64,000 nucleotides of DNA from positions 1 through 64,000 of IMG/VR virus record IMGVR_UViG_3300030041_000009. One strand, written 5' to 3'. Made by a program: the position numbers and the translations under genes. The notes beneath the pieces were generated by a model. The model saw only the letters and a program-made list of their open reading frames with translations. It did not search any database and was not told the DNA's origin. Numbering within the stretch: the first letter of the stretch is position 1; each line of letters begins with the position of its first letter. This document shows, piece after piece, positions 3,733-46,856 of this stretch.

Positions 3733-3889
3733 TTTGAAAATTATTTAATTTATTGAGTTTTTCAATTCTATCATCTTTCAATTTTTTTCTTTCTGCTTCT
3801 CTATCATATTTATATGATAGTTTTGCGTTTGAAAAACTTGGATCTGCTACTAAATCATAAGTAAATAGTTTATTTAAAATTATTTTCAA
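3722..3889 (-). CDS. 55 aa mini-protein: prohead-protease-like motif plus RxxKLxxL tag
   Basis: Own translation (TTG start): MKIILNKLFTYDLVADPSFSNAKLSYKYDREAERKKLKDDRIEKLNKLNNFQINQ. Confidence 0.6.
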   Translation of the reverse strand: MKIILNKLFTYDLVADPSFSNAKLSYKYDREAERKKLKDDRIEKLNKLNNFQINQ

Positions 3890-4181
3890 TTGATTTTAAT
3901 TTCTTTTTTCTTAAATGCTTAACATATTCATTTGGAAAATTATCATAGTCTAATACAGGTTTATCAGATGCTTTTTTTATCATATCTAATTGCCATTGTA
4001 TAGATTCTATTGGATCCTCACATTCACTTTCATATGAAAAAATGTTTATTGAATTTTCTGTACAAGATTCAGGTATATCACTTTCATCATTGTAATATAC
4101 TTCATAAACACCAAATTCGACTTCAGAGTCAAAATCTGTTACCATTCTTTTTGCTAAAATTCTATAATTCCAATACGACAT
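3870..4181 (-). CDS. Phage protein (WNYR type) with RxxKLxxI tag
   Basis: MSYWNYRIL...YEVYY...LRKKKLKSI. Confidence 0.7.
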   Translation of the reverse strand: MSYWNYRILAKRMVTDFDSEVEFGVYEVYYNDESDIPESCTENSINIFSYESECEDPIESIQWQLDMIKKASDKPVLDYDNFPNEYVKHLRKKKLKSIENNFK

Positions 4182-22428: not shown

Positions 22429-22932
22429 TTATAAATTGCCTAATTTACTTACTTCGTCATTTAATTTAGTTCCAAGTGATTCTAAATTTATCATTTGCTT
22501 TTTTATTTGTTCTATACTATTATTAAATTCTTCTTTAATATCTTCTTCAGATATATCTTCGCTTGTCATTAGTTCATCAAATTTTTTAAATAATTCTTGA
22601 CTTTCTATATTATTTGATACAAATTCGAATGAATCATAATCTATATTTTGATCAATTTGATATTCATTTTCAGTTATTTTTTTATCTATGGTAAGTATAT
22701 CATTTTTCCTTTTATCTGAAAATTCTTTAAAGTTAAAAACATATTCTTCATTTTTAAGAGGACACCATTCTGCAGTGTAAAAACTAACATTATCATTAAA
22801 ATTAATAAAATATTCATCATTTTTTAAAAATTTTGATAGTATACATTCACTTATTGGTTCATCTCCTGATTCATAATAATATTCAGTATTACAAAATGGA
22901 CAATTTCCACAGCAATTTACGGTTTTTTTCAT
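22429..22932 (-). CDS. CxxCPFC zinc-finger plus coiled-coil protein
   Basis: CCGNCPFC...C...WCPL. Confidence 0.6.
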   Translation of the reverse strand: MKKTVNCCGNCPFCNTEYYYESGDEPISECILSKFLKNDEYFINFNDNVSFYTAEWCPLKNEEYVFNFKEFSDKRKNDILTIDKKITENEYQIDQNIDYDSFEFVSNNIESQELFKKFDELMTSEDISEEDIKEEFNNSIEQIKKQMINLESLGTKLNDEVSKLGNL

Positions 22933-23093
22933 TTTAAATTATTTATTTTTTCGATTTTTTCTTTTCTTTTCTTATTGAGTTCTTTTCTTTTAATTTCTCT
23001 CATAAATTCGTCATCAAATATAATATGTTTAGGATATAAGTTTGCATAATCCATATTTACTATCTGATATTCAAATTTATAATTTTTCTTCAT
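22929..23093 (-). CDS. 54 aa mini-protein: PolB motif A-like segment plus tag
   Basis: Own translation: MKKNYKFEYQIVNMDYANLYPKHIIFDDEFMREIKRKELNKKRKEKIEKINNLK. Confidence 0.6.
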   Translation of the reverse strand: MKKNYKFEYQIVNMDYANLYPKHIIFDDEFMREIKRKELNKKRKEKIEKINNLK

Positions 23094-23846: not shown

Positions 23847-25879
23847 ATGATGAGAGCAATATGTAAGCTAGATTACGGACAGTTTGAAAATAACAAAACC
23901 TACAATTATTCATGCACTAACGACAATAAATTCCACGTTGATGGTCAATATGGAAAAACAGAATTTAATAAAAGACAATTTAATGCATTATTTACATTAG
24001 AAAGAACAAAAAACCCAAACAAATCATTTAATTTTTAATATCTAATTTATGAAATTTAATATCGGAGATAATGTTATATTCATAAATAATTCTAAAACTA
24101 TTTATGCTTGGGATCTTGTTGATTATAAAATCTATAAAATTGAGAATTTTTCAATTCGTTCGTCTGAATTTATGTATTCGGTGAGTGATAATGATAGTAA
24201 TACAACTCAAAGTTGGTATTTTGAATGTGATTTTATTTCATTGCAAGAATATAGAAAAATTAAATTAAACGAAATAAAACAATTATCATGAGAAGATTTA
24301 GTAAAAAATTAAAAAATATATTTAATTCTATTAATCCATATTACGAAATTAATAAAGAATCCGATAGATTTCAAGAACTCAGAATAAAATTGAATGAAAA
24401 TCGATTAGATTATATAATAAAAGAGTTTGAAAGAATAGAAAATATGAGTGATGAAGAAAGAATAGAATATAAAAAAAATTTATTGAAAGAAGAAGCAAAT
24501 AATATAATTGATAAATTAGAATCAAATTCAGAATTATATAAAGAATATAATAATATTATGAGGAGAAAGAAAATTAAAAAATTAGAAAGTAATGAGTAAT
24601 TTAGTAGAACATGCAAAAAGAGAATTTCTTAAATTAGGTTATAAACCAATTGATAAATGCGAAAATGATCCAAATAAATGGATACAAGAAAATATATTAG
24701 AATTACTTGAAATATTTTCTAAACAAGGTCATTCTGGATTTTCAGCATCATATGTACTTAGTTATTTTAATAAATTGGCTAATTTTGAACCAATTGCTCC
24801 GATTATGTGTACCGATGATGAATGGAATGATATAGCAGATGAATGTTATCAAAATAATCGTTGTTCTGCAGTATTTAAAGAAAAAATTGATAGTAATCCA
24901 TATTATTTGGATGCTATTATTTTTGTTGATGAAAATAATTCATCTTTTACTGGTAGAGCATATAATAATAGTCATGATAGTATAACAAGTAGGCAAACAA
25001 TTAAATTACCATTTACACCTAAACGTTTTTATGTTGATGTAGTTTATTATAATGATGAAAATCATATTAAAGATGAATCCCAATTAAAAGAAGTTTGGAA
25101 ATATTATGAGCATCAAGAAACTAAGTCATATATTAGATTACAAAAATTAAAATCAATAGAATGAAAATTGGAGATGTTCAAGTTTATTTAGGAGATACTA
25201 ATATGTATTATACTAAAAATAAAAAATATTATGTATATAGGATAAATTCTCATTTTATACCTGGAACTATTTGTGGACATATAATGAATGATATAGGAGA
25301 TAGTGTTTATTTTCGTGATGATGATATCGACAGGAATTGGATAGATTTAAAAAAATATAGAAAAGAAAAAATTAATAATTTAAATAATATTTATGAAAAA
25401 AACTTTGAATGATTTTGATTATAGTTTTAAATTTCCTGATAATGATTTTAATAATTTATCGTTAGAAATGCTACAAAAATGGAAAACATTAATCAATCAA
25501 GATAAAATAAAATTAAAAAAAGAAGAAAGAATTGCTAAATTAAATGAAATAAATTCTAAATAAAATGACAATACAAAATTATAAGAAAAAATATTTAATA
25601 TGTAAAGATGATTTTGGTAAAAATATTTATGTTGGAGATACTGTGGAATTATTTTGTCCACTTGAATTTTCAACTACATGGAAATCAATTGTTTATTGGA
25701 GTATGTTATCTGGAGCGTGGGTAGATTTTCCTACTATATTTATTGATACTCCAAATCCTCAAAGAATTTTATATTCATTACTTAATCAGCAAGAATATAA
25801 TATTTGTGATGTAGATAGTGATATTCCAATAAAATATAAAGGATATTGTAAAAAAATAAAATCTTTTTATACAAAATAA
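23847..25879 (+). CDS. Run of small ORFs (23847, 24049, 24288, 24592, 25161, 25393, 25565); five carry the C-terminal tag
   Basis: Tails YRKIKLNEI, RRKKIKKL, RLQKLKSI, RKEKINNL, RIAKLNEI. Confidence 0.65.
25393..25563 (+). CDS. 56 aa mini-protein: LxKWxxLI segment plus tag
   Basis: Own translation: MKKTLNDFDYSFKFPDNDFNNLSLEMLQKWKTLINQDKIKLKKEERIAKLNEINSK. Confidence 0.55.
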   Translation: MKKTLNDFDYSFKFPDNDFNNLSLEMLQKWKTLINQDKIKLKKEERIAKLNEINSK

Positions 25880-32360: not shown

Positions 32361-34208
32361 TTATTTTATAAATTTTTCAACCTTTTTATTAGTATCTTCT
32401 TTTAAGTATATTTTATTCATTATATTAAATATATATTTAAAAAATTTTTTAAGTTCTTTTCGTTGAAATTTTCTTGAATCAATAAGAATATCACTATGTA
32501 TATTATTTAATTCAAATTTAGTATATATTGCTTTAAATAATATACTATTTTCTATAACACTATTATTTTTGAAATATATTCTTTCTAAATCATTACATTT
32601 TATTGTTCTATTTTTTATTTCATTAAATTCAGTCTCAATATAAATTTCATAAATTTTTCTTATTGTATTATTTTTAAATTTTGAAATAATATCTTTATCT
32701 ATAATATTATTAATCACAAGATAATTTAATATTTCTCTTTCATCATTTTCAATTAAAATATCATTTTCACTACTAATATTATTGATATCAAGTAGTTTTT
32801 TATTAACTTCATCAGGTGCAAATACTTTACCTTTTTCATCTGATTCATTCCATAGCATAGTTATTCCCCATTTAACTCCTGATATATCATTAATGATTTT
32901 ATTTCTAAATAAATCTAAAAACTTAATATCTTTATATGATTCTAATTTACATTTATTGAATATATTAGAGCAAGAACCTATACCATCATGCCCCCCTGCA
33001 ACAGTTCTATCATCATTATATCCCATATGAGTTTGAAAATTTTTTAATAAACCATCCATATATTTACCTAAATTATTAATCGGTAATCCTAATTTATCTT
33101 TTGGTAAATCTTCTTCTAACATATCTGACATTTTAGTTGTTAAATTTGCAAGTTGAAGAGTATTACCATATTGTAATAATACAAAATTTATTTTAGTATC
33201 ATTAGGTATGATGCCAGATTTTACATCTTGTGCAAAAATTGCTTTTGCTCTTAGAGCATTAGACCATGTACCAGATGGAACATACATAAGATTTACAATA
33301 ATTTGATATACAACTGGTTTAACTTGTAATTTTACTACATCTGAATTTATAATATTACCATCATTGTCATAATCTATATATGAAATATTTTGTGCGAATT
33401 TTTTCCAAAATTGTTCTTGTGAAGTGAATATAATTTTTTTACCATCTTCTGAGAATCCTTGATATTTTTCTCCAATACCTTTTGTTTTTATTTTCATTTG
33501 TGCTAATCTTAAATATGCATCAGATACAAAATCAGGTTCATCACCATTTTTGAAATTAGGATTGTTTTTAGGATAGAATATTTTAAATAACCTGAATATA
33601 TTATAAATTGATGGCTCTTGAGATGCATTTATAACTTCAATAAATGTTTTATGATCAGAACGTTTTAACATTTGATTAAATGATGCTGCAAAATTTAATT
33701 TTGCATTAGGCCCGCTAGCAATTTTTTTTAAATCAAAATCTAATATTCCTTTGATATCAACGTTATATTCTTCATATTTAGCAGAATCAACCATATCAAT
33801 CCAATCTTTAGTATCATTTGAAAACGGTATTCCTAATTGTAACGCTAAACCTTCAGCAGCAGAACCTGTATCAGTTTTTATGCTACCTTTCTTTTGAGCT
33901 ATTATTTTATCTTCTTCTGAAAAAACACCGTGATGATCAACGTAATAATTAAATATTTCGTCATCTGATGCAAAATCTAAAGTTATATTAATCAACGAGT
34001 CATCAAGTTTAAATGCTGAAACACCTTCTTGATAATCAATCAATCCATATTTGATAATTTTAAAATCATGATTAATTAAATAATTTTTCATTATTATTGC
34101 GGAAACAATTCCGTCTAAATCGTTGTGTGTAATTAAACATACATTTTTTCCAGATTTTCCTTTTTTAATCCAATAATTTATATTATTTGGAAGTCTTGGC
34201 GCTGCCAT
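32361..34208 (-). CDS. DHH-family phosphoesterase
   Basis: THNDLDG, LDF, VDHH, GSAA, AGGH. Confidence 0.8.
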   Translation of the reverse strand: MAAPRLPNNINYWIKKGKSGKNVCLITHNDLDGIVSAIIMKNYLINHDFKIIKYGLIDYQEGVSAFKLDDSLINITLDFASDDEIFNYYVDHHGVFSEEDKIIAQKKGSIKTDTGSAAEGLALQLGIPFSNDTKDWIDMVDSAKYEEYNVDIKGILDFDLKKIASGPNAKLNFAASFNQMLKRSDHKTFIEVINASQEPSIYNIFRLFKIFYPKNNPNFKNGDEPDFVSDAYLRLAQMKIKTKGIGEKYQGFSEDGKKIIFTSQEQFWKKFAQNISYIDYDNDGNIINSDVVKLQVKPVVYQIIVNLMYVPSGTWSNALRAKAIFAQDVKSGIIPNDTKINFVLLQYGNTLQLANLTTKMSDMLEEDLPKDKLGLPINNLGKYMDGLLKNFQTHMGYNDDRTVAGGHDGIGSCSNIFNKCKLESYKDIKFLDLFRNKIINDISGVKWGITMLWNESDEKGKVFAPDEVNKKLLDINNISSENDILIENDEREILNYLVINNIIDKDIISKFKNNTIRKIYEIYIETEFNEIKNRTIKCNDLERIYFKNNSVIENSILFKAIYTKFELNNIHSDILIDSRKFQRKELKKFFKYIFNIMNKIYLKEDTNKKVEKFIK

Positions 34209-37726: not shown

Positions 37727-38578
37727 TTATTTTTCTTTTTTAAGTTTAACAGCATCTTTAATACTAAATTTTTTAATTACTAGAGGATCATCAGGAGATT
37801 CAATATAAACATCTTTACCGTCAATTCTATTCACACGTCCATTCATAATATCATTATCTATGTATACACCAGCATTAAGAATTGATCTTTCTTTTGGTGT
37901 TTGTGGATCGATAACATTAAAGTCTGATATTTTTTTAACCCATTGTGCTTTTACTGCACCTATGCCGAAGTTTGGATCAGATTTAGGTTCTTCTTCTTGA
38001 CCTAACATAGTATATTTAGGCATTTCATTTGATTCTGTTATTTCATCAATTTTTAAATAATCATACAAATCTTCAACTTCTTTATCACTAATTGAATTTA
38101 ATGCATCTTCATCAATATCTGAGTTACTATTAAGTATTTCTTTTTTTAAAGTTTCAATATATTCACTATATTCGTCATATGCAGGTTTAGCTTCTACAGA
38201 ATCTCTACTATAATATTCTTTTATTACATCTTTTGCTACATCAGTTCTTTTTGTCTTTGTTACATTTTCTTCTTTCCAATTATCATCAAAATCTTTAAAT
38301 TTTAATACATTTTCAATATTTTTCATATTACTATAATTATTTTCTTTTATTGATTGATTTACTAATTTAGATTTGAACGCAATTGTTTGTAGTTTACTAT
38401 CCTTTGCAGCAAATTCATCCCAGCTTTCTATATGATGATCAACTGCATTACCTATATATTGAAGATTTGGAATGCCTTTATTCATTCTATCATTGGTTGT
38501 TAAATCTCCGATATCTTTTCCTTTGGTCTCTGCTCTTAATTTTTTTAATTGTCGAATACTAGTTTCTCTTGGTAACAT
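37727..38578 (-). CDS. Hypothetical late protein with TKRTDVAKD motif
   Basis: ORF; late-type motif upstream. Confidence 0.65.
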   Translation of the reverse strand: MLPRETSIRQLKKLRAETKGKDIGDLTTNDRMNKGIPNLQYIGNAVDHHIESWDEFAAKDSKLQTIAFKSKLVNQSIKENNYSNMKNIENVLKFKDFDDNWKEENVTKTKRTDVAKDVIKEYYSRDSVEAKPAYDEYSEYIETLKKEILNSNSDIDEDALNSISDKEVEDLYDYLKIDEITESNEMPKYTMLGQEEEPKSDPNFGIGAVKAQWVKKISDFNVIDPQTPKERSILNAGVYIDNDIMNGRVNRIDGKDVYIESPDDPLVIKKFSIKDAVKLKKEK

Positions 38579-38649
38579 ATTAAGTTGTTATTTTTTATGT
38601 ATATATTAAAAACCGTTTTCCGTTTTTTTATAAAAAAATGTTGTGAAAA

Positions 38650-40498
38650 TTAATTCACAACATTATCATTTTTCTTTTCCATTATTTTTATTAATTCAAG
38701 AATTTTTGTTTTTTCATTAAATGTTTGAATTTCTTTATCAGAAATTTCTAATGGTTTAAAATGTAAAACTATTTCACCTCCTGCTAATTTGTGTAATTTA
38801 CCTTCAACAGTATGCCAATCTAAAATTCTGTGAATTCCTTCTATATGTGAAATTACATTTTCATTTTTTGATATTTTAATAGCATGTTTTTTATTTCTTT
38901 TATAAATTTCAATCGAAGGACATCCTTGATTACTAATAATACCAATCTCTTTAGAATTTTCATCAAATAATTTAGAATAAATAGTGAACTCTATGTTACA
39001 ACGCTTTGTTGTATATCCAAGTGATATACATATATCTTCCATAAAATTAATATTAAATACATCATTTATGACATAGTATTCCATTATACCATATTTTTCA
39101 ATTATTGGATTTTTAATATTATTATTTTTTCCTATCCATTCTTCTTTTGTCATATTTGTCATTTTACCAACAATCATAATCAGTTATATTTTCTTCTTTT
39201 TTTAAAAGATTATCAATTATAATTACTGCAGTTCCTATTCCTGTTGGAGTAAATCTATAACTAAATCTACCGCCTATTGCTGTTTTCGGTGATTTTTTCT
39301 TTTTCTCTTGTTTTTTGATCCATTCATTTGCAGATTTTTCTTCTTTTTCATTTAAATAATATGTTATCATAATTTAATATATTTTTAATTGTTCAAGTTT
39401 TTGCTTACGAATATCTTGTTTACAAAAATGATGATAATCTATTAATCTAATAGTAATTAATTTCATTCTATTTTTTGCAAGTTCTATATCAAAATATTTT
39501 ACTGAATAACAAGCTAAATCATCAGTATACGTAGATAATTTTATATCTTTTATTATATTTTCACCTAATGAATTTATAGATTTTAAATAATTTTTAACTG
39601 ATGTATTTTTCATTATTTTAATTTCTTAATTGTTTTAATTTTTATATCTATCATTGATATCAATCTATTTATTTCTTGAGAATGAATGCCACCCTGTGAT
39701 ATTTTAATTAAATATTGAATATTTATATTATATAAATCTTCTAATATGGTAATTGTATCAGAATTATTTATCAAAGTTTCAAGTTCTGTACTATCATTCC
39801 AAAAAATTTTATTTTTCCTTGTAGAATTAGTAGTAATTATTATTAATGAAGAAAATAAAAAAGATATATAAAGCGCCAATTTAAGCATAATATTAACTGA
39901 AATATCTTTATCTATAGTAATAAAATAAACCATCGAATAAATAATAATAAAATATATCACGAATGATATACCAAAAATAATCCATAAAGAACATTTACTA
40001 AAAAATTTAGTTATTGCTTTCATAATTTTATTTTTTTAAACTGAAATAATATAGAATTAACCATGATAAAACTAATATAATAAAAATAATTAACAAATAA
40101 TATTTACTAAAAAAATTATTTATTGCTTTCATAATTTTATTTTTTAAATGTAAATACTAAAAAGTTTATAAACCTATGCTTATGAATAATATCAAACAAT
40201 TACTTTTAAATTTATTTGAGAAAATAGAATACATATTTAAAAATATAGTAAATTCGCTAATCAATTCTTTAAATTTTATATCTGCATCTTCTTGACTCAT
40301 TTTATTATCAAGTACATAATTTTTAATATCAATCATTCTATTTGATAAACTAAATACTTTTTCGACCATTTTGTCAGAAAAAACTCCAATCAAATCAAAT
40401 GTTTCCATTAATTTGTTGAAAGATTTATAATTATCAATATTATTATCATTTATCCAAGAATTTTCTAAATTAAAACTATAGTCTGATTTCATTTCCAT
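38650..40498 (-). CDS. Five hypothetical ORFs (38650, 39164, 39374 tagged, 39613 two-TM, 40166)
   Basis: Co-oriented packed ORFs. Confidence 0.6.
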
Positions 40499-40565
40499 TT
40501 ACATTTGTTTGTTTAATTAATAATGTACAAAGATAATAAAAATAATATGTAGTTCATTACATTTT

Positions 40566-40793
40566 TTATTTATTTAATTTTTTTTTAATGTTTTTTGAAT
40601 TAGATATTTTTTCAAGATTTTTTAATTTTTTAATTCTTTCTTCCTTTTTCTTTCTTTTGTTTTCGTATTTTTTTAATATTTCTGCAGTTTTAAAATTAAT
40701 AATTATAAAATCTCCTGATCCTGAAAGTTTTTTATTATGTATCAGATTAGATGCATCTAATAATTTTTGATAAAGTTCATTATTAATCGACAT
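40566..40793 (-). CDS. 75 aa mini-protein: major-capsid-like segment plus tag
   Basis: KLLDASNLIHNKKLSGSGDFIIINFKTAEIL...EERIKKLKNL. Confidence 0.6.
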   Translation of the reverse strand: MSINNELYQKLLDASNLIHNKKLSGSGDFIIINFKTAEILKKYENKRKKKEERIKKLKNLEKISNSKNIKKKLNK

Positions 40794-41265
40794 TTAATTT
40801 TTTTAATTTTTTGCTTCTTATATATTTAACAATATTAGAATTTTTATTAATTATATCATTACTAATATAACGAATACAATTTTCTTCTACTTCACAATAA
40901 TTATTGTAACAATTTTTTAATTTACATGCATCATATTTATCATAAGAATCCCATTCAATTCTTTTATTCGGACAATTTTCATCAATAAAATTAATAAATT
41001 TTTTCTTATTTTCAATATTAATATATCTATTCTTTGATGTTTTTATATCTGTTTTTATTGTGAAAGTTTTTAATGCACTTGATGATATAGTTAATTCTAT
41101 TTCAGCCTCATTATCTCTTATGGTGTATCCCGTTATTGAATCATAATCAATTATTGTGAATTCATGATAACAACTAAATTTACAATAACTTAAAGTTATT
41201 TCAGTTAATGATACAATTATATCTCTTACTTTAAATTCTGGATTTAAATAAATTGGAATTACCAT
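40783..41265 (-). CDS. Cys-containing hypothetical protein with tag
   Basis: Ends YIRSKKLKKL. Confidence 0.6.
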   Translation of the reverse strand: MVIPIYLNPEFKVRDIIVSLTEITLSYCKFSCYHEFTIIDYDSITGYTIRDNEAEIELTISSSALKTFTIKTDIKTSKNRYINIENKKKFINFIDENCPNKRIEWDSYDKYDACKLKNCYNNYCEVEENCIRYISNDIINKNSNIVKYIRSKKLKKLNVD

Positions 41266-41360
41266 ATTATATTTTTTTCAAAGATAATAAAAAAAAATTG
41301 AATTACCTACTATTTTAAAAATATTTATATAAAAAAAGTCCCATAAAGAGACTTTTTAAT

Positions 41361-41432
41361 TTGAGCAAGTGGTCTGATTTGAACAGAATCCTTTAACTGG
41401 AAGCTAAACGCATTAACATATGCTACCACTGC
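41361..41432 (-). tRNA. tRNA-Gly(TCC)-like, atypical (copy 1)
   Basis: GCAGTGG...TTTAG-CTTCCAG-TTAAA...TCTG-TTCAAAT-CAGA-CCACTTGC-TCAA; bulged acceptor stem, 4 bp T stem. Confidence 0.7.
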
Positions 41433-41435
41433 ATT

Positions 41436-42293
41436 TTAATAATATCTATATTTTTCATTCATATTTCCTTGATCCTTAATAACTTCATTAATTATAGATA
41501 ATAACTTTTTTTTATTTTTAATACATTTATTTTTAAATATATTTTCCCATTTTTTAAAATAATCTATTAATGGTAAATTTGAATCTATAAAATCTAAATT
41601 GTAATTATTTTTAATAATTTGTTCATTTAAATGATTAATTAAAACTATTAACGCTGGCTCTGATATTTTTTCTAACATATAATTATAAAATTTTTCAGCA
41701 TTAAAACTATCCAATTCTTCATATTTTTTCCATGATTCACATTCTTTAATTTTTTCTAATAAAATATTTTTATCTATGCTATTAAATTTCATTAAAAAAT
41801 GATACGCTTCTGAAACTCTAGCGTTTAATTCATTATCCAAAGATAAATAAATAAAATATGTAAAATCATTTAAAGGTGTCTCGATTTTGTTAAAATTTGT
41901 TATAATTTTTTGTAAATTAACATGAGTAGGTAAATCTCTTTGATTCTTAACCAAATTATAAAATTCTAAAACATGAGTCAATTCATGAGATATTTTACTT
42001 TTTATGATGTAATCATCAGTTCCAATAGGAACAAAAAAGTATAAATTTATATTTTTTAATATATTATTTGAAAAAGTATAATTTATAGGATCAAATTTAG
42101 CATAACAATCTAATCTTTTTTCAAAATTAATAGTCAATTTAATATTATATAAAGGAAATAAAATATCTTTTAAATCTAAAAAAATAATCTTATCTTCATA
42201 GTCTAAAAAATTAGTATAAATAATATCAGAATATGTTTTAATAATGTTAGAAATACCATTACCTTCATTGATAAAATTTAAATACTTTTTCAT
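41436..42293 (-). CDS. HExxH metallopeptidase, paralogue 3
   Basis: MKKYLNFINEGNGIS; SHELTH...YLSLDNELNAR. Confidence 0.7.
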   Translation of the reverse strand: MKKYLNFINEGNGISNIIKTYSDIIYTNFLDYEDKIIFLDLKDILFPLYNIKLTINFEKRLDCYAKFDPINYTFSNNILKNINLYFFVPIGTDDYIIKSKISHELTHVLEFYNLVKNQRDLPTHVNLQKIITNFNKIETPLNDFTYFIYLSLDNELNARVSEAYHFLMKFNSIDKNILLEKIKECESWKKYEELDSFNAEKFYNYMLEKISEPALIVLINHLNEQIIKNNYNLDFIDSNLPLIDYFKKWENIFKNKCIKNKKKLLSIINEVIKDQGNMNEKYRYY

Positions 42294-43264
42294 ATTGGTA
42301 TATTAAAATTTTCATTTAATAAATTTTTAAAAAATATAGGATCATATAAATACATTCTATTAAAATCTTTATGAAATATTGCAGATGGTATCGATGAGAA
42401 CTCTAAATTACCCTCATTAATCCTATTATCAACACTTGATATTTTACTTTTTATATATTTTAACCTAATATCAAATAATTCTTTAAGATCAATTAAAAAT
42501 TTATCATTATTAGTTTCTTTCCATATAGATTTATTTAATTTCTTAATATATTTCTTATTTTTTGAATAATAATAAATACTCTGATATATTTTATCTTTTA
42601 ATAAATTTAATTCAATTTCTTCTATATTACTAAGCTTTTTTATATTAAATTTTTCAATATCTTTAATATTATCAAATATTTTATTGTATTTTTTACCAAT
42701 CTTACTAAAATAATAATATTGATGTATTTGAGCATCGATTTCATGACTTAAAGTTTTATATAATAATTCAATTATATTATTAATATAATCTGATTTAAAA
42801 TTGTTTCTAAATTGACTCAAAATAACTCCGATAGACCAAGAAGATGACCTAAATTTATTATTTTTAGAAATATTGTAATATTGAAAAATGTGTAAACATT
42901 CATGTAAAATGACAGAATCTATATAATCATTAAAATATATCTCATCTTTATCAGAAATATAAATATCTAAAACTATTTCAATATTAGATAAAATATCATT
43001 ACTCATTTTAGAGTTATTAAATCTAGCAACAGAGTTGCAAACATTTTCTTTATATTTATATAAATTAAATATTACTTTAATATTATCTAATTTTAAGTCA
43101 TTTTCAGATAATTCATAAGTAAACTCATTACTTAAATTAATATTATTAAAATTAATTAATATATTATGCAAATCTTTTGATATAGTCTCCTGTAAAATTT
43201 CACAAGAATCAGATATCGATTTTCTTTCTAATAAATATGTGTTGTAATTGTTTAAATAATCCAT
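42290..43264 (-). CDS. HExxH metallopeptidase, paralogue 4 (start MDYLNNY)
   Basis: LHECLH...YKTLSHEIDAQ; the longer track ORF extends into the tRNA. Confidence 0.7.
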   Translation of the reverse strand: MDYLNNYNTYLLERKSISDSCEILQETISKDLHNILINFNNINLSNEFTYELSENDLKLDNIKVIFNLYKYKENVCNSVARFNNSKMSNDILSNIEIVLDIYISDKDEIYFNDYIDSVILHECLHIFQYYNISKNNKFRSSSWSIGVILSQFRNNFKSDYINNIIELLYKTLSHEIDAQIHQYYYFSKIGKKYNKIFDNIKDIEKFNIKKLSNIEEIELNLLKDKIYQSIYYYSKNKKYIKKLNKSIWKETNNDKFLIDLKELFDIRLKYIKSKISSVDNRINEGNLEFSSIPSAIFHKDFNRMYLYDPIFFKNLLNENFNIPI

Positions 43265-43273
43265 AATATAAAT

Positions 43274-43345
43274 TTGAGCAAGTGGTCTGATTTGAACAGA
43301 ATCCTTTAACTGGAAGCTAAACGCATTAACATATGCTACCACTGC
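43274..43345 (-). tRNA. tRNA-Gly(TCC)-like (copy 2, identical)
   Basis: Inside the 88 bp perfect direct repeat 43271-43358 = 41358-41445. Confidence 0.7.
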
Positions 43346-43379
43346 ATTTTAATAATATAGTAATTAAATATTAAAAAGT

Positions 43380-43706
43380 TTATAAATTAAATTTTTTAAT
43401 ATCATATTTTATTTGTATTTCTGGATCTAATTTTACATCATTTAAAACCTTAGCAGTATCTAAATAAATTTTTTTATCTAAATCACATACATTAAAATTC
43501 TCAATTAATGTATCAATATCAAAAATATCTTCAATTTCATAATCTATATCATTGTCTTTATATTCATTGCAAATATGATTTATAGTAAAATTATTTCTGC
43601 TTAATTTATCATCAAATGAATACATATCATTTATACCACAATCTGATATAGTACAAAGATAAATTATTGTTCCAGTATTATTTTCAAATAATTTTAAATG
43701 CTTCAT
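43380..43706 (-). CDS. Hypothetical protein with CTS-like leader and KKFNL tail
   Basis: MKHLKLFE...DIKKFNL. Confidence 0.6.
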   Translation of the reverse strand: MKHLKLFENNTGTIIYLCTISDCGINDMYSFDDKLSRNNFTINHICNEYKDNDIDYEIEDIFDIDTLIENFNVCDLDKKIYLDTAKVLNDVKLDPEIQIKYDIKKFNL

Positions 43707-43707
43707 A

Positions 43708-45309
43708 TTATTTTTTTAAAGTATATATAAATTTTAAAAATCCAGAATCATATATGCGATATACCTTCCGTTCTAACATAATTTCATGCTCTGTTTTATT
43801 TATATCAAATCCTTCTGTTACTAATTTATTTTTACGAAAATTACATTTATTATGCCTAATATTATCAATAATATATTGATAATCTGGCTTAACTTTATCG
43901 ACAAAATCAAATCCTATTTTTTTATATAAATTAATTTGACTAAAACTTCTATCAAAATAACATACTATTTCTTTCGCACTATATTTATTTATAAAATAAT
44001 TTAATAACGTAATTTCACTATCAATAATATTAGTATTTATTTTATTACTAAAACTTATCATCTCATAATTATTATTCTTAATATTAAATGTCATTAAACT
44101 AATTAATTCATTACCTAAATATAAACCAATTTTTATATTAGATTTAATATATCCATGTATATCATTTTTTTCTAAATAACTTTTAATTAAATTTATATCT
44201 AAAACTTCTCTTATTTCACAATCTTTTGAATCAATTACGTTTTCAAAAATATTTAATTTACTTAATATTATAGATTTTATAATTTCATTATTATAAATCC
44301 AGTCATCTTCATAAATATGAATCAATTGAATGCCTTGTTTTTCACATTCTTCAGTTTTATTTAAATGATAATCTTTATCTTTATTTAATTCATTGTGCCA
44401 CCATAAACCATTAAATTCAAATGCTAATTTCAAATTAGGTAAATAAATATCTAATTCTAAAGGATTTAAAATTTTTCTATCATTCAAAATTATCTCATCA
44501 TTATAATTTTCTTTAATAAAACCTAATAATTGTAACTCTAACCCACTAACATTTTTTGAAATTGGATTGCATTCTGTACATAATATTGTTTTATTATTTA
44601 TCCTATTCCACAATAATTTATAATCAATATTAAAATGATGATCTTTATGTAAATCACATTTAAATTCATATTGACCATTTGATAAATATCCAACAAATAT
44701 ATCTTTTCTATCTCTAATAATTTCAGATTTATATAATCCTTTATCAAAATTTTTCTTAAAACTAATAAATTGATTTTCTCTCATTTTAATAGATATTTCT
44801 GCATTTTGACTAGCATATTCTACTCCATATCTTTCTAAATTCGTTGATTTCATTTTATATGGATTTGTATAGTTAGCATCTCCATATTTTTCTAATTTAC
44901 TTACATGTCCTTTTTTGTTAATTTCTTTAGATTGCTGAGGATATTCGACACCAAAATTTTTTAAACAAGTTTCTACTTTTTTATCTTTAATAATTTGAGA
45001 ATTTGAAACATTTTCTACTCCATATTTTTCTAAATTTGTATTTTTTGATTTTTGTTCAGAACATTTTCTACTACAAGCATAATATGTTGTTGAATTTTTT
45101 GTGTTATAATTATATCTACTATATGAAATAATAGTTTCTTCGCCACAAACATCACATTTTGCTTTAATTTTTGATACACTTCTTGTAGGTAAATCTATTG
45201 CAAGTATAGAAATAATTTCATTTCCTCCTTTTACTTCATACCCTTTTTCTTTATAATATTTAATTTGATTATTAGATATTTTTACATCGACATACTTTGT
45301 CAAAATCAT
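43708..45309 (-). CDS. Hef-like homing endonuclease (Vsr/PD-(D/E)xK type)
   Basis: CDVCG, KYGV repeats, ELDIYLP...AFEFNGLWWH...IHIYEDDW. Confidence 0.75.
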   Translation of the reverse strand: MILTKYVDVKISNNQIKYYKEKGYEVKGGNEIISILAIDLPTRSVSKIKAKCDVCGEETIISYSRYNYNTKNSTTYYACSRKCSEQKSKNTNLEKYGVENVSNSQIIKDKKVETCLKNFGVEYPQQSKEINKKGHVSKLEKYGDANYTNPYKMKSTNLERYGVEYASQNAEISIKMRENQFISFKKNFDKGLYKSEIIRDRKDIFVGYLSNGQYEFKCDLHKDHHFNIDYKLLWNRINNKTILCTECNPISKNVSGLELQLLGFIKENYNDEIILNDRKILNPLELDIYLPNLKLAFEFNGLWWHNELNKDKDYHLNKTEECEKQGIQLIHIYEDDWIYNNEIIKSIILSKLNIFENVIDSKDCEIREVLDINLIKSYLEKNDIHGYIKSNIKIGLYLGNELISLMTFNIKNNNYEMISFSNKINTNIIDSEITLLNYFINKYSAKEIVCYFDRSFSQINLYKKIGFDFVDKVKPDYQYIIDNIRHNKCNFRKNKLVTEGFDINKTEHEIMLERKVYRIYDSGFLKFIYTLKK

Positions 45310-45371: not shown

Positions 45372-46856
45372 TCATAAAGGAGTTCCCTCTAATTTTTTAA
45401 GCTCATTTTGTAATTTATCAAGTTCTTCATGTTTTTCCATCATCACGTTTTTCCACTTTTTTCTATCAGAATATACTTCTCTCATTACACTACTAACAAC
45501 TCCTTCCTCATTCTTAAATACTGATCCATTTAAAGTTATGATATCATCAGGCTCAATTGTTAATTGATGTCCATTAAATATGGAATAATCTTTACCTTTT
45601 ACTTTTTGACCTTTATATGAATCTGCAGATATGTTAAATTCTCTCATAGTAGTAGGATACAAGGAACTAAAGTCAAAACAGCATGTCCATTCTGCCATAC
45701 CTCTTACAGGTTCTTTAACCCATCCTCCTTTTATAGATTCAGTTTCAGTATCTCCGTATTCACTATCTTCATTTCTAACAAGAACAATATTTTTTTGATC
45801 TCTTAATTTTTCTCTTAAAATTCCTTCTGTTAATGCAAGAGTTGAAATTGCATCTTTAATCTTAATTTTACCCAATACAGCCATGCCATAAAGTATGTCT
45901 ACATATTTCATTTTTTTATGTATCTGTTGAACTAAGCAACTATCTACAGCATTATAGAATACAAATTTCTTATAGTCCTCTTTATGCAATTTTTTTAAAT
46001 CTCCATCGTAATTAATTTTCTTAATTTCTTTTCCTAGTAATTTTTCAGAAGCGAAATCTAAAGATAAACTTTCCTTTACTTTAACTGATTGATCCCATTT
46101 TTTAAATAATTCCATATAATCAACTATAACCCTATGCGCTGGCATTTCTGCGTAACTTGGATTAATAGCATTAGGAGGATTAAATGGTTTATTAAGTTTT
46201 TTTGTGAATGAGGCAACCTCAGGTTCAAGTCCAATTCTTCTTGCTCTTGCAACTAAATATGTCCAGTCATAATTAATGAAATTCCAACCAGTTATTACTG
46301 GCATTTTAGGAACTAATTTGTTAAAAAAACTATGAAGCATATCATATTCAGTTTTGTACTGAACATATTTAAATTTATAATTTGTTCCAAATTTTTGAAA
46401 ATGAGTATTGATATCATTACCAATTGATTCAATTTGTGCAGCATCTAAAAACTGAGTTCCAATTACCAACACTTTATCTTTATTTACTATTGATATTGTT
46501 TGTATCTCACCCTCAGCAAGTTGTGGTTGTGGTTTACCAGTATTAAGAATCTCGTTCTCAATATCAACGAAGAATATATCTGGTTCTGCATATGAATATA
46601 TTTCATCTCGTTCTTCTTTATCAAAACTATCTATGAAATCATAAATGGAATACCGATTTGGGTATTTTGTATAAATCTCTTTAACATTTTCTCCTGACCA
46701 TGTGACAAATCTACCACTTTTTTCTTTATCATCATCAGTAGTTTTTATAAATTTTGTTGGGCGACTCCAATTTTTATATTTTAGTTTGATCTGACCAGAA
46801 CTATCTATATATGAGATAATTAGGTTATTATTTTTATATTCAGTATCTACAATCAT
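45372..46856 (-). CDS. Family B DNA polymerase, N-terminal subunit only (exonuclease plus motif A)
   Basis: VDIE (ExoI), GWNFINYD (ExoII), YNAVD (ExoIII), GGWV, DFSSLYP; motifs B and C absent. Confidence 0.9.
   Translation of the reverse strand: MIVDTEYKNNNLIISYIDSSGQIKLKYKNWSRPTKFIKTTDDDKEKSGRFVTWSGENVKEIYTKYPNRYSIYDFIDSFDKEERDEIYSYAEPDIFFVDIENEILNTGKPQPQLAEGEIQTISIVNKDKVLVIGTQFLDAAQIESIGNDINTHFQKFGTNYKFKYVQYKTEYDMLHSFFNKLVPKMPVITGWNFINYDWTYLVARARRIGLEPEVASFTKKLNKPFNPPNAINPSYAEMPAHRVIVDYMELFKKWDQSVKVKESLSLDFASEKLLGKEIKKINYDGDLKKLHKEDYKKFVFYNAVDSCLVQQIHKKMKYVDILYGMAVLGKIKIKDAISTLALTEGILREKLRDQKNIVLVRNEDSEYGDTETESIKGGWVKEPVRGMAEWTCCFDFSSLYPTTMREFNISADSYKGQKVKGKDYSIFNGHQLTIEPDDIITLNGSVFKNEEGVVSSVMREVYSDRKKWKNVMMEKHEELDKLQNELKKLEGTPL

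What the first reader, a model, noticed from the sequence alone, without database searches (positions are those of the whole stretch)
40566..40793. Mini-ORF resembling an internal segment of a gp23-type major capsid protein
The helix-GxG-FII-helix segment recalls the conserved gp23 region (T4 ...RQTGRGEGNFIIAS..., from memory) and is fused to EERIKKLKNL. Capsid proteins are known defence triggers, so a capsid-epitope decoy is plausible.
Basis: partly seen in the sequence, partly recalled or inferred. Interest (0 to 1): 0.7.

Follow-up and report, generated by a model that had tools for sequence, protein, structure and literature searches.

The report
Capsid-fragment mini-protein in a megaphage
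A 75-residue gene of a roughly 700-kb bacteriophage is a conserved, diverged copy of about 43 residues from the core of a T4-type major capsid protein, joined to a basic tail motif that many other small proteins of this phage also carry; this capsid-derived mini-protein family appears undescribed and its function is untested.

Summary
The ORF is real: window 40566-40793, minus strand, 75 aa.

The resemblance to gp23 is homology, not chance. The ORF belongs to a family of about 40 protein clusters from uncultivated phages. A profile-profile comparison aligns family residues 3-45 with T4 gp23 348-390 (probability 95.7%, E 9e-9). The ORF alone scores 24.2 bits against a gp23-type capsid profile; the best of 2000 shuffles scores 8.3. 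In gp23 this segment is an A-domain helix-strand-helix and includes the capsomer-interface helix where gp24-bypass mutations N381S and A387T map.

The genome is a Mahaphage-clade megaphage, about 22% GC. Its nearest complete relative (735 kb) has a full gp23-type capsid protein; the window's 256-kb record holds only a 284-aa truncated capsid paralogue.

The gene is syntenic in relatives, with dN/dS 0.24-0.45. It always lies among replication and nucleotide-metabolism genes, never in a structural module.

The "EERIKKLKNL" part is a C-terminal peptide motif, R-x-K-K-L-K-x-L. It is found in 32 of 443 ORFs of the record.

Function is inferred only. I favour mimicry of the capsid interface.

The parts
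40566..40793 (-). Coding sequence of the 75-aa mini-protein (P0001), stop codon included
   Evidence: ORF list and translation. A 99%-identical copy lies on an independent contig. Syntenic orthologues have dN/dS 0.24-0.45.
40659..40787 (-). Residues 3-45: diverged copy of the gp23 A-domain helix-loop-strand-helix, equivalent to T4 gp23 348-390
   Evidence: hhalign probability 95.7%, E 9.4e-9. Pfam Gp23 hits of family members fall at profile positions about 220-263. PDB profile search gives gp23 351-390. Shuffle control: 24.2 bits against a maximum of 8.3.
40614..40637 (-). Residues 53-60, RIKKLKNL: this gene's instance of the clade-wide C-terminal motif R-x-K/E-K-L/I-x-x-L/I, inside a predicted long helix (34-74)
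   Evidence: R53 and K56 are invariant in the family. Genome-wide enrichment at C-termini, with a strong frame bias. AlphaFold2 helix.
40783..41265 (-). Upstream 160-aa cysteine-rich ORF that overlaps the mini-ORF start by 11 nt. It is the probable first cistron of a two-gene unit and ends in the same motif (RSKKLKKL).
   Evidence: ORF list. The same gene pair occurs in relatives L003, L043 and L045. Tail listing.
41279..41290 (-). Promoter-like element TTATTATCTTTG, containing the Bacteroides-type -7 box TAnnTTTG, 14 nt upstream of the 160-aa ORF (inferred, not shown)
   Evidence: Part of repeat D3. TAnnTTTG is enriched 31-40 nt upstream of start codons: 18 in that bin against about 5 per bin elsewhere.
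40528..40539 (-). Second copy of TTATTATCTTTG, in the 67-nt spacer after the mini-ORF stop and 30 nt before the next gene (110 aa). It probably marks the start of the next transcription unit.
   Evidence: Repeat D3, sequence, motif statistics.

Best explanation
SHOWN. The ORF is a genuine, selected gene of a Mahaphage-clade megaphage. Its first 45 or so residues are a diverged copy of one helix-loop-strand-helix unit from the A domain of a gp23-type (T4-like, HK97-fold) major capsid protein. That unit includes the short helix that forms the subunit-subunit interface in the capsomer core. The rest of the protein is a long basic helix carrying R-x-K-K-L-K-x-L, a peptide motif found at the C-terminus of about 7% of this phage's ORFs. 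The gene belongs to a family of 60-96-aa proteins found only in uncultivated low-GC phages, always among replication and nucleotide-metabolism genes. About 190-aa forms also exist in which the module is fused to a deoxyribosyltransferase-like domain. INFERRED mechanism, about one chance in three. The protein acts by molecular mimicry of the capsid interface. As a monomer it exposes an unpaired strand and the interface helix. It would therefore bind not-yet-assembled gp23-type capsid subunits, its own or those of a co-infecting rival, at the surface normally occupied by the neighbouring subunit. This would delay or poison capsomer closure. The basic helix would supply a second contact, to a partner shared by all tail-bearing proteins or to nucleic acid. 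Homology and gene reality: confidence at least 0.9. The specific mode of action: about 0.3.
For: Gene reality: conserved start and synteny downstream of the PolB fragment in relatives; dN/dS 0.24-0.45 in all six pairwise comparisons; 15 representative clusters by exhaustive phmmer and 39 by profile search. Homology to gp23; in addition, all annotated tblastn hits of two family members fall inside major capsid or vertex genes of T4-like phages. Structural meaning of the segment: gp24-bypass mutations N381S and A387T lie in a short A-domain helix at the interface of neighbouring subunits within the capsomer (PMC9546572), and that helix is inside the aligned block 348-390. The clade does use gp23-type capsids: LR756501 has a 608-aa capsid protein scoring 82.9 bits on PF07068, and LR756502, LR745206 and LR756500 have 554-572-aa frames hit by the family profile. 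The first helix carries the Mahaphage-capsid signature ASN-x-I, which suggests origin from a megaphage capsid gene. LR756502, a complete genome, holds a full capsid gene, a 250-aa truncated paralogue and a 59-aa free-standing mini-ORF. The AlphaFold2 model leaves the strand unpaired between two helices. Genome context points to expression with replication genes: PolB, DHFR, PhoH, dUTPase, topoisomerase II, 5'-3' exonuclease, dCMP deaminase.
Against: No binding, expression or phenotype data exist. No RNA run was listed that holds the locus. The phage's own capsid protein is not on the record, so cognate pairing could not be modelled. A protein acting on its own capsid would be expected in the structural module, which is not where the family lies. 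The fusion to an enzyme-like domain fits a generic docking or oligomerisation module as well as it fits mimicry. The central strand is buried in the folded A domain, so a 45-residue excerpt may not keep the native shape. No capsid-fragment inhibitor encoded by a phage is known to me.
Confidence: 0.33

Rival explanations
1. Immune decoy or antagonist. The capsid-like segment is made before the late genes. It occupies a host sensor that recognises unassembled capsid protein, without activating it.
For: Capsid proteins are frequent triggers of defence systems, including CapRel, Thoeris and CBASS (PMC13728456). The family sits in replication and accessory regions rather than structural modules. 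Some members are fused to a SLOG/deoxyribosyltransferase-like nucleotide-binding domain; my own speculation, not tested here, is that such a domain could act on signalling nucleotides in a counter-defence protein.
Against: No sensor is known that reads this A-domain segment. The segment is core and interface, not a surface epitope. For known sensors, binding of capsid protein activates rather than blocks. The PADLOC library and anti-defence family libraries were not searched. I retrieved no published capsid-derived decoy.
Confidence: 0.2
2. Generic docking or oligomerisation module. The capsid-derived helix-strand-helix plus basic helix has lost any capsid-related role. It now tethers small proteins or enzymes to a replication or nucleotide-metabolism complex, or to a partner that recognises the shared tail.
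For: The module is used as an N-terminal add-on to a deoxyribosyltransferase-like domain that is free-standing elsewhere. It is constantly adjacent to dUTPase, DHFR, PhoH, PolB, 5'-3' exonuclease and dCMP deaminase. The tail is shared with 31 otherwise unrelated small proteins.
Against: The homodimer prediction gave no verdict and cannot be used either way. It is unexplained why sequence similarity to gp23 would be retained well enough to exceed Pfam's threshold in three members.
Confidence: 0.2
3. Non-functional relic of a capsid-gene duplication or of homing-endonuclease-mediated gene fragment capture.
For: Endonuclease genes lie next to or near several members: HNH adjacent in LR756502, a weak GIY-YIG N-terminus in P0014, and GIY-YIG genes within a few kb in L050, L056 and L057. 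This may explain the origin of the family.
Against: dN/dS is 0.24-0.45. Start codon, length class and synteny are conserved. The family spans several distinct phage lineages.
Confidence: 0.05
4. One piece of a capsid protein encoded in fragments, as the PolB of this clade is, which reassembles in trans.
For: PolB is a conserved 494-aa fragment in this clade. The record also holds a 284-aa C-terminal capsid-like ORF.
Against: The 284-aa ORF contains its own copy of the same segment. Complete relatives have intact 554-608-aa capsid genes, one of them alongside a mini-ORF. The mini-ORF carries a tail that full-length capsid proteins lack.
Confidence: 0.03
5. Chance resemblance in an AT-rich, isoleucine- and lysine-rich proteome.
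For: Pairwise BLASTP at the homologous site gives E 0.22. Pfam does not hit the window's ORF on its own.
Confidence: 0.01

Closest known systems
T4 gp23 major capsid protein (Pfam PF07068; PDB 5VF3, 7VS5)
   Same: Residues 3-45 are homologous to gp23 348-390, the A-domain helix, G-x-G loop, strand and interface helix.
   Different: The protein covers only about 43 of 376 profile positions. It has no N-arm, E-loop, P domain, insertion domain or remaining A domain. It carries a basic helical tail that capsid proteins lack, and it lies in a replication module, not a head module.
Capsid-gene paralogues made by duplication: T4 gp24 vertex protein, and the truncated 250-284-aa gp23-like ORFs of Mahaphages seen here
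   Same: All derive from the major capsid gene. The 284-aa paralogue of this record carries the same C-terminal motif.
   Different: gp24 keeps the whole HK97 fold and is a virion component. The mini-protein keeps a single supersecondary unit.
Capsid-derived or capsid-binding interference proteins: the satellite capsid homologue Ccm of SaPIbov5, P4 Sid, and Gag-derived restriction factors such as Fv1 (from my own knowledge, not tested here)
   Same: Same principle: a protein derived from or mimicking a capsid subunit that redirects or blocks assembly or function of a capsid.
   Different: Those proteins are full domains with demonstrated binding. Here the fragment is about 45 residues and binding is only inferred.
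Short terminal targeting or recognition peptides: the T4 N-terminal capsid-targeting sequence, encapsulin C-terminal cargo-loading peptides, and the basic C-terminal ClpX recognition signal of MuA (from my own knowledge; an analogy for the tail only)
   Same: A short terminal peptide shared by many otherwise unrelated small proteins of one virus, as for the R-x-K-K-L-K-x-L tail.
   Different: The sequence differs. No receptor, protease or compartment has been identified. In the roughly 190-aa fusion forms the motif is internal.

Membership tests
Gp23 major capsid protein family (Pfam PF07068) | The sequence reaches the family's curated gathering score (24.4 bits) | tested here: not met
   The window's ORF gives no Pfam hit at E up to 1. 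Three relatives do pass: P0009 30.9 bits, P0011 26.9 bits, P0164 28.4 bits.
Gp23 major capsid protein family (Pfam PF07068) | Homology of the aligned segment to gp23-type capsid proteins | tested here: met
   hhalign probability 95.7%, E 9.4e-9, family 3-45 against gp23 348-390. P0001 scores 24.2 bits against the capsid profile; the shuffle maximum is 8.3.
Gp23 major capsid protein family (Pfam PF07068) | Complete HK97 fold (N-arm, E-loop, P domain with spine helix, full A domain) able to form capsomers | tested here: not met
   At 75 aa, matches cover profile positions about 220-263 of 376 only. The model is two helices and a loop.
Gp23 major capsid protein family (Pfam PF07068) | Location in the head-morphogenesis module, next to scaffold, protease or portal genes | tested here: not met
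   Neighbours are the PolB fragment, DUF7487, HExxH proteins and small ORFans. Relatives sit beside DHFR, PhoH, dUTPase and exonuclease genes.
gp23-fragment mini-protein family (defined in this report; alignments A2 and A5) | 60-96 aa; core L-x-x-K-I-x-x-A-S-N-x-I ... G-S-G-N-F/Y-I-I ... V-A; followed by R-x-K-K-L-K | tested here: met
   Alignments. phmmer E from 1.9e-15 to 8e-4 against 14 other representative clusters. The profile hits the ORF at E 5e-26 in its own genome.
gp23-fragment mini-protein family (defined in this report; alignments A2 and A5) | Conserved position in the replication and nucleotide-metabolism region, under purifying selection | tested here: met
   Synteny in L003, L043, L045, L050 and L051. 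dN/dS 0.24-0.45.
Proteins with the C-terminal R-x-K/E-K-L/I-x-x-L/I tail (defined in this report) | Motif within 25 residues of the C-terminus, in the reading frame | tested here: met
   RIKKLKNL lies 15 residues from the end, the longest distance of the 32 cases.
Mahaphage-clade megaphages (Al-Shayeb et al. 2020) | Clade membership by terminase and major-capsid phylogeny; genome above 500 kb; predicted Bacteroidetes host | tested here: inconclusive
   The PolB fragment's best matches are the 735, 642, 636 and 634-kb genomes, at 41.5-54.6% identity. Relatives occur on contigs up to 711 kb. CheckV estimates the 256-kb record as 36% complete. A Bacteroides-type -7 box is enriched upstream of genes. 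The clade definition is in PMC7162821. No terminase or capsid tree was built, because the capsid gene is not on the record and the terminase was not looked for.
Phage anti-defence decoys | Binds a host immune sensor and prevents its activation | not testable with these tools
   No sensor candidate or host genome is available. The PADLOC library was not searched for this protein.

The most novel reading that the evidence does not exclude
Megaphages express, together with their replication genes, a mini-protein cut out of the capsomer-interface region of the major capsid protein. It works as a competitive mimic: either a dominant-negative poison of rival phages' gp23-type capsid assembly, or an antagonist of host sensors that read unassembled capsid protein. 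Its R-x-K-K-L-K-x-L tail would be a previously unrecognised C-terminal address or turnover tag that marks 7% or more of the phage's small proteins for a common partner.
Probability: 0.2. Interest if true: 0.85.

Novelty: new variant of a known kind. Interest (0 to 1): 0.62.

Why it matters
Capsid proteins are now recognised as a main cue by which bacteria detect phages, and capsid-derived proteins are classic interference tools in eukaryotic virology. A conserved phage gene family that is an excerpt of the capsomer-interface region of the major capsid protein gives a concrete, testable candidate. It can be tested for capsid-assembly interference between phages and for manipulation of capsid sensing.

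Separately, the shared C-terminal motif covers about 7% of ORFs in this record and about 30% of the genes on one related contig. It suggests that megaphages label a large set of small proteins for a common fate. If so, this would help to organise the huge number of ORFan genes in these genomes.

Tried and rejected
1. Giant-virus hypothesis. I first read the genome as a eukaryotic giant virus (Hsp70, asparagine synthase, RtcB, PolB, 22% GC). I rejected this: no NCLDV capsid, A32, VLTF3 or Rpb2 was found, and the PolB fragment's nearest relatives are 460-735-kb phage genomes.

2. Single-sequence searches with the window's ORF gave nothing useful:
- Pfam.
- PHROGs, E 0.015 to an unnamed family.
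- tblastn against 50,697 phage records.
- Word-indexed homologue search, which returned only a near-identical copy.
- ESM Atlas.
- Foldseek against the PDB, with no match.

3. BLASTP of the ORF against T4 gp23 gave its best score at the cleaved N-terminal propeptide (E 0.007; 8 of 500 shuffles reach it), not at the homologous site (E 0.22). I treat this as noise. BLASTP against the LR756501 capsid protein likewise missed the homologous site.

4. This phage's own capsid gene was absent from the 256-kb record and from four related IMG/VR fragments, where the only Gp23 hit is the mini-ORF itself. The 615-aa ORF at 32361-34208 is not a capsid protein.

5. I tested whether all tail-bearing proteins are fragments of larger proteins. 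No common Pfam or PHROG family was found among the 31 others.

6. I tested whether the tail is a nucleotide-level signal, such as a ribosome-binding or promoter element. I rejected this. The DNA consensus is used 39 times in the coding frame at C-termini against once in the other open frame. Its distance to the stop codon and to the next start codon varies. It also occurs before a terminator-like hairpin and before long spacers.

7. Homodimer prediction gave no verdict and is not evidence either way.

8. An AlphaFold2 model of the 284-aa paralogue without an alignment had pLDDT 31 and is unusable.

9. RNA evidence: no listed RNA run holds the locus.

10. The search for related loci with the family alignment failed because it found no conserved 7-10-column block.

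Full report
**1. The observation**

Window 40566-40793 (minus strand) is an open frame of 75 codons from ATG to TAA. It reads as an N-terminal helix, the loop and strand GSGDFIII, a second helix, then a lysine-rich stretch containing EERIKKLKNL.

RQTGRGEGNFIIAS is gp23 residues 366-379 (T4 gene 23 taken from NC_000866). The literal pattern G.G.FII occurs once in the 75,378 residues of the 443 ORFs I called on the 256-kb record, in this ORF only.

**2. What genome this is**

The window has 17-33% GC over 2-kb windows, about 22% overall. It encodes Hsp70, asparagine synthase, RtcB, NAD synthase, glycosyltransferases and a 494-aa family-B polymerase fragment.

I first took it for a eukaryotic giant virus. 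That is wrong:
- No NCLDV capsid, A32, VLTF3 or Rpb2 is present on the record.
- The polymerase fragment's best matches among 50,697 phage records are the 735-kb (54.6% identity), 642, 636, 634 and 462-kb "uncultured phage" genomes.
- Relatives occur on contigs up to 711 kb.

The four largest of those genomes (634-735 kb) are described in Al-Shayeb et al. 2020. They are placed in the Mahaphage clade with predicted Bacteroidetes hosts (PMC7162821).

CheckV rates the 256-kb record 36% complete. The Bacteroides-type -7 promoter box TAnnTTTG is enriched 31-40 nt upstream of start codons. The phage is found in peat, freshwater, soil and permafrost metagenomes from several studies.

**3. Is the resemblance to gp23 real?**

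Pairwise methods are weak:
- BLASTP against T4 gp23 gives E 0.22 at the homologous site.
- Pfam does not hit the ORF.

The ORF nevertheless has a family. Exhaustive phmmer against 1.8 billion representatives found 15 clusters of 61-128 aa. A profile search found 39.

The alignment shows a core L-x-x-K-I-x-x-A-S-N-x-I ... G-S-G-N-F/Y-I-I ... V-A, then R-x-K-K-L-K with R53 and K56 invariant.

Evidence for homology to gp23:
- Eleven of the 15 first-round members hit Pfam Gp23 (PF07068), always at profile positions about 220-263, with best E 2.5e-7. Three family members in all exceed the curated threshold: P0009, P0011 and the fusion form P0164.
- The family profile's top hit among all PDB sequences is T4 gp23 351-390.
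- tblastn of two members against phage genomes lands in 222 and 36 records. All hits that carry an annotation lie inside major capsid or vertex genes.
- hhalign of 25 short members against nine gp23-type capsid proteins gives probability 95.7% and E 9.4e-9. The nine were T4 gp23 and gp24, two from LR756501, Tenacibaculum PTm1, two cyanophages, Lak-C1 and this record's 284-aa paralogue. The alignment pairs family 3-45 with gp23 348-390.
- Against an HMM of those capsid proteins, the window's ORF alone scores 24.2 bits. The best of 2000 shuffles scores 8.3, and all 25 family members beat every shuffle.

The resemblance is therefore homology to one helix-loop-strand-helix unit of the A domain.

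**4. What that unit is in the capsid**

In the T4 head structures, the gp24-bypass substitutions N381S and A387T lie in a short A-domain helix. That helix is located at the interface of neighbouring subunits within the capsomer (PMC9546572). It is the second helix of the aligned block.

The strand before it sits in the A-domain sheet; this assignment is my own, from general knowledge of the HK97 fold, and was not checked against a structure here. The copied piece is thus core plus intracapsomer interface, not a surface epitope.

AlphaFold2 with the family alignment predicts helix 3-21, an unpaired extended loop 22-33 and one long helix 34-74 (pLDDT 82).

**5. Relation to this clade's capsid genes**

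- LR756501 has a 608-aa gp23-type capsid protein (82.9 bits) and a second 479-aa one.
- The other complete Mahaphage genomes have 554-572-aa frames hit by the family profile.
- Their equivalent segment carries A-S-N-x-I-A, like the mini-family and unlike T4. This suggests derivation from a megaphage capsid gene.
- The window's own record lacks the capsid gene.
- It does hold a 284-aa ORF at record position 167695-168549, outside the window. This ORF aligns with residues 380-602 of the LR756501 capsid protein (E 2e-9) and ends in the same tail motif.
- LR756502, a complete genome, contains a full capsid gene, a 250-aa truncated paralogue and a 59-aa free-standing mini-ORF next to an HNH endonuclease gene.

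**6. Is it a working gene?**

- A 99%-identical copy lies on an independent contig.
- In related megaphage contigs the orthologue (92-96 aa; the window's copy is about 20 residues shorter) keeps the same start codon.
- It also keeps its place downstream of the PolB fragment, often overlapping a roughly 165-aa cysteine-rich ORF and followed by the same string of small genes.
- dN/dS over 66 codons is 0.24-0.45 in all six pairs.
- Other family members lie between dUTPase and DHFR, or next to topoisomerase II, 5'-3' exonuclease, NusG and dCMP deaminase, or near DHFR, PhoH and NAD synthase. None is in a head module.
- About a dozen clusters are roughly 190-aa fusions of the module to a deoxyribosyltransferase-like (DUF4406/SLOG) domain. 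That domain is free-standing in LR756501 and in cultured phages.
- No cultured phage in the collection carries the free-standing mini-gene.

**7. The "EERIKKLKNL" part**

The pattern R-x-[KRE]-K-[LIM]-x-x-[LIM] occurs 35 times in the 443 ORFs. Of these, 32 lie within 25 residues of a C-terminus, against 6.8 expected if placement were uniform. Most are in proteins of 54-140 aa.

A search with the nucleotide consensus at four or fewer mismatches finds:
- 39 copies in the coding frame at C-termini;
- one in the other open frame;
- none antisense;
- nine intergenic or in uncalled ORFs.

Arg and Leu codons vary synonymously. This is a peptide motif, not an RNA signal.

On a contig of a different low-GC phage, 11 of 37 genes end in ...RKKKLxSL. 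The motif recurs in other related loci. It is absent from the sampled parts of T4 and LR756501. The 31 other tail-bearing proteins share no known domain. Its role is unknown.

**8. Mechanism**

Nothing was measured, so this section is inference. I favour interface mimicry at about one in three. Under this model, a small protein made with the replication genes presents the unpaired strand and interface helix to unassembled gp23-type subunits, its own or a rival's. This would interfere with capsomer closure.

The alternatives are:
It fits the position outside the structural module and the current list of capsid-triggered defences. It has no sensor, and the segment is not a surface epitope.
- A generic docking or oligomerisation module, about 0.2. 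It is suggested by the enzyme fusions and the constant nucleotide-metabolism neighbourhood.
- A dead relic, about 0.05.
- A piece of a split capsid gene, about 0.03.
- Chance, about 0.01.

The last three are disfavoured by the data above.

**9. Novelty**

Database pipelines already tag a few members "Gp23 (weak)". I found no description of a family of capsid-fragment mini-proteins or of the shared tail in the papers retrieved. I rate it a new variant of a known kind, namely capsid-gene paralogues and exaptations. There is a modest chance that it represents a new class of capsid mimic.

Noticed in passing
Whole 256-kb record; in the window: 3870-4181(-), 22929-23093(-), 24288-24599(+), 25161-25412(+), 40566-40793(-), 40783-41265(-): A C-terminal peptide motif R-x-K/E-K-L/I-x-x-L/I (typical form RKEKLKKL) ends 32 of 443 ORFs, mostly ORFans of 54-140 aa. 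Of its 35 occurrences, 32 lie within 25 aa of a C-terminus, and it is used in the coding frame 39:1 over the other open frame. In locus L011, 11 of 37 genes end ...RKKKLxSL. Function unknown.
   Followed up: partly
Record position 167695-168549(-), outside the window (L026:1207-2061:-): A 284-aa truncated gp23-like paralogue covering the spine helix, the A domain and the C-terminal P-domain strands. It aligns to residues 380-602 of the LR756501 capsid protein (E 2e-9) and also carries the C-terminal motif. LR756502 has a similar 250-aa ORF. A single-sequence AlphaFold2 model was unusable.
   Followed up: partly
41358-41445 and 43271-43358 (tRNA at 41364-41432, minus strand, and the identical second copy): An exact 88-nt direct repeat contains a tRNA by Rfam (36.7 bits against a threshold of 29). 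The anticodon loop CUUCCAG gives anticodon UCC, probably glycine. ARAGORN missed it, apparently because of a bulge in the acceptor stem. Its translation produces the spurious shared peptide at the start of two listed ORFs.
   Followed up: partly
39936-40039 and 40045-40148: A tandem 104-nt duplication (77% identity) copies the 5' end of the 136-aa membrane-protein gene. It creates a 34-aa ORF with the same N-terminus.
   Followed up: no
41436-42293(-) and 42290-about 43265(-): Two adjacent paralogous proteins of about 285 and 325 aa each carry an HExxH motif, with a weak SprT-like hit. They are possible metalloproteases.
   Followed up: no
45372-46856(-) and 43708-45309(-): The family-B DNA polymerase is a 494-aa piece holding the exonuclease domain and the start of the polymerase domain. 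This piece is conserved as such in more than 100 relatives. A DUF7487 gene sits next to it; in the window it follows on the same strand, while in relatives L003, L050 and L051 it is shorter (329 aa) and on the opposite strand. The rest of the polymerase was not located.
   Followed up: no
38637-38664: An 11-bp-stem hairpin is flanked by T runs on both strands. It is a bidirectional terminator-like site between the 283-aa and 175-aa ORFs, and is the only such site found in 38500-43500.
   Followed up: no
Loci L015 and L056; proteins P0144-P0169: About 190-aa fusion forms join the capsid-fragment module to a deoxyribosyltransferase-like (DUF4406/SLOG) domain through the RRKKL helix. That domain is free-standing in LR756501 (668436-668804), Caulobacter phage CcrColossus and Anabaena phage A-1(L).
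   Followed up: partly
40566-40793 compared with L003:10001-10279, L043:6001-6291 and L050:10928-11218: The window's copy is 75 aa, whereas the syntenic orthologues are 92-96 aa. The last 20 or so residues (…EKY…KHKKH) are missing here.
   Followed up: no
L065:1435-1614(-) and neighbours; L008; L050, L056, L057: Homing-endonuclease genes lie beside or near several family members: an HNH gene overlapping the LR756502 mini-ORF, a weak GIY-YIG N-terminus in P0014, and GIY-YIG genes within a few kb elsewhere. This may bear on how the capsid fragment was captured.
   Followed up: no
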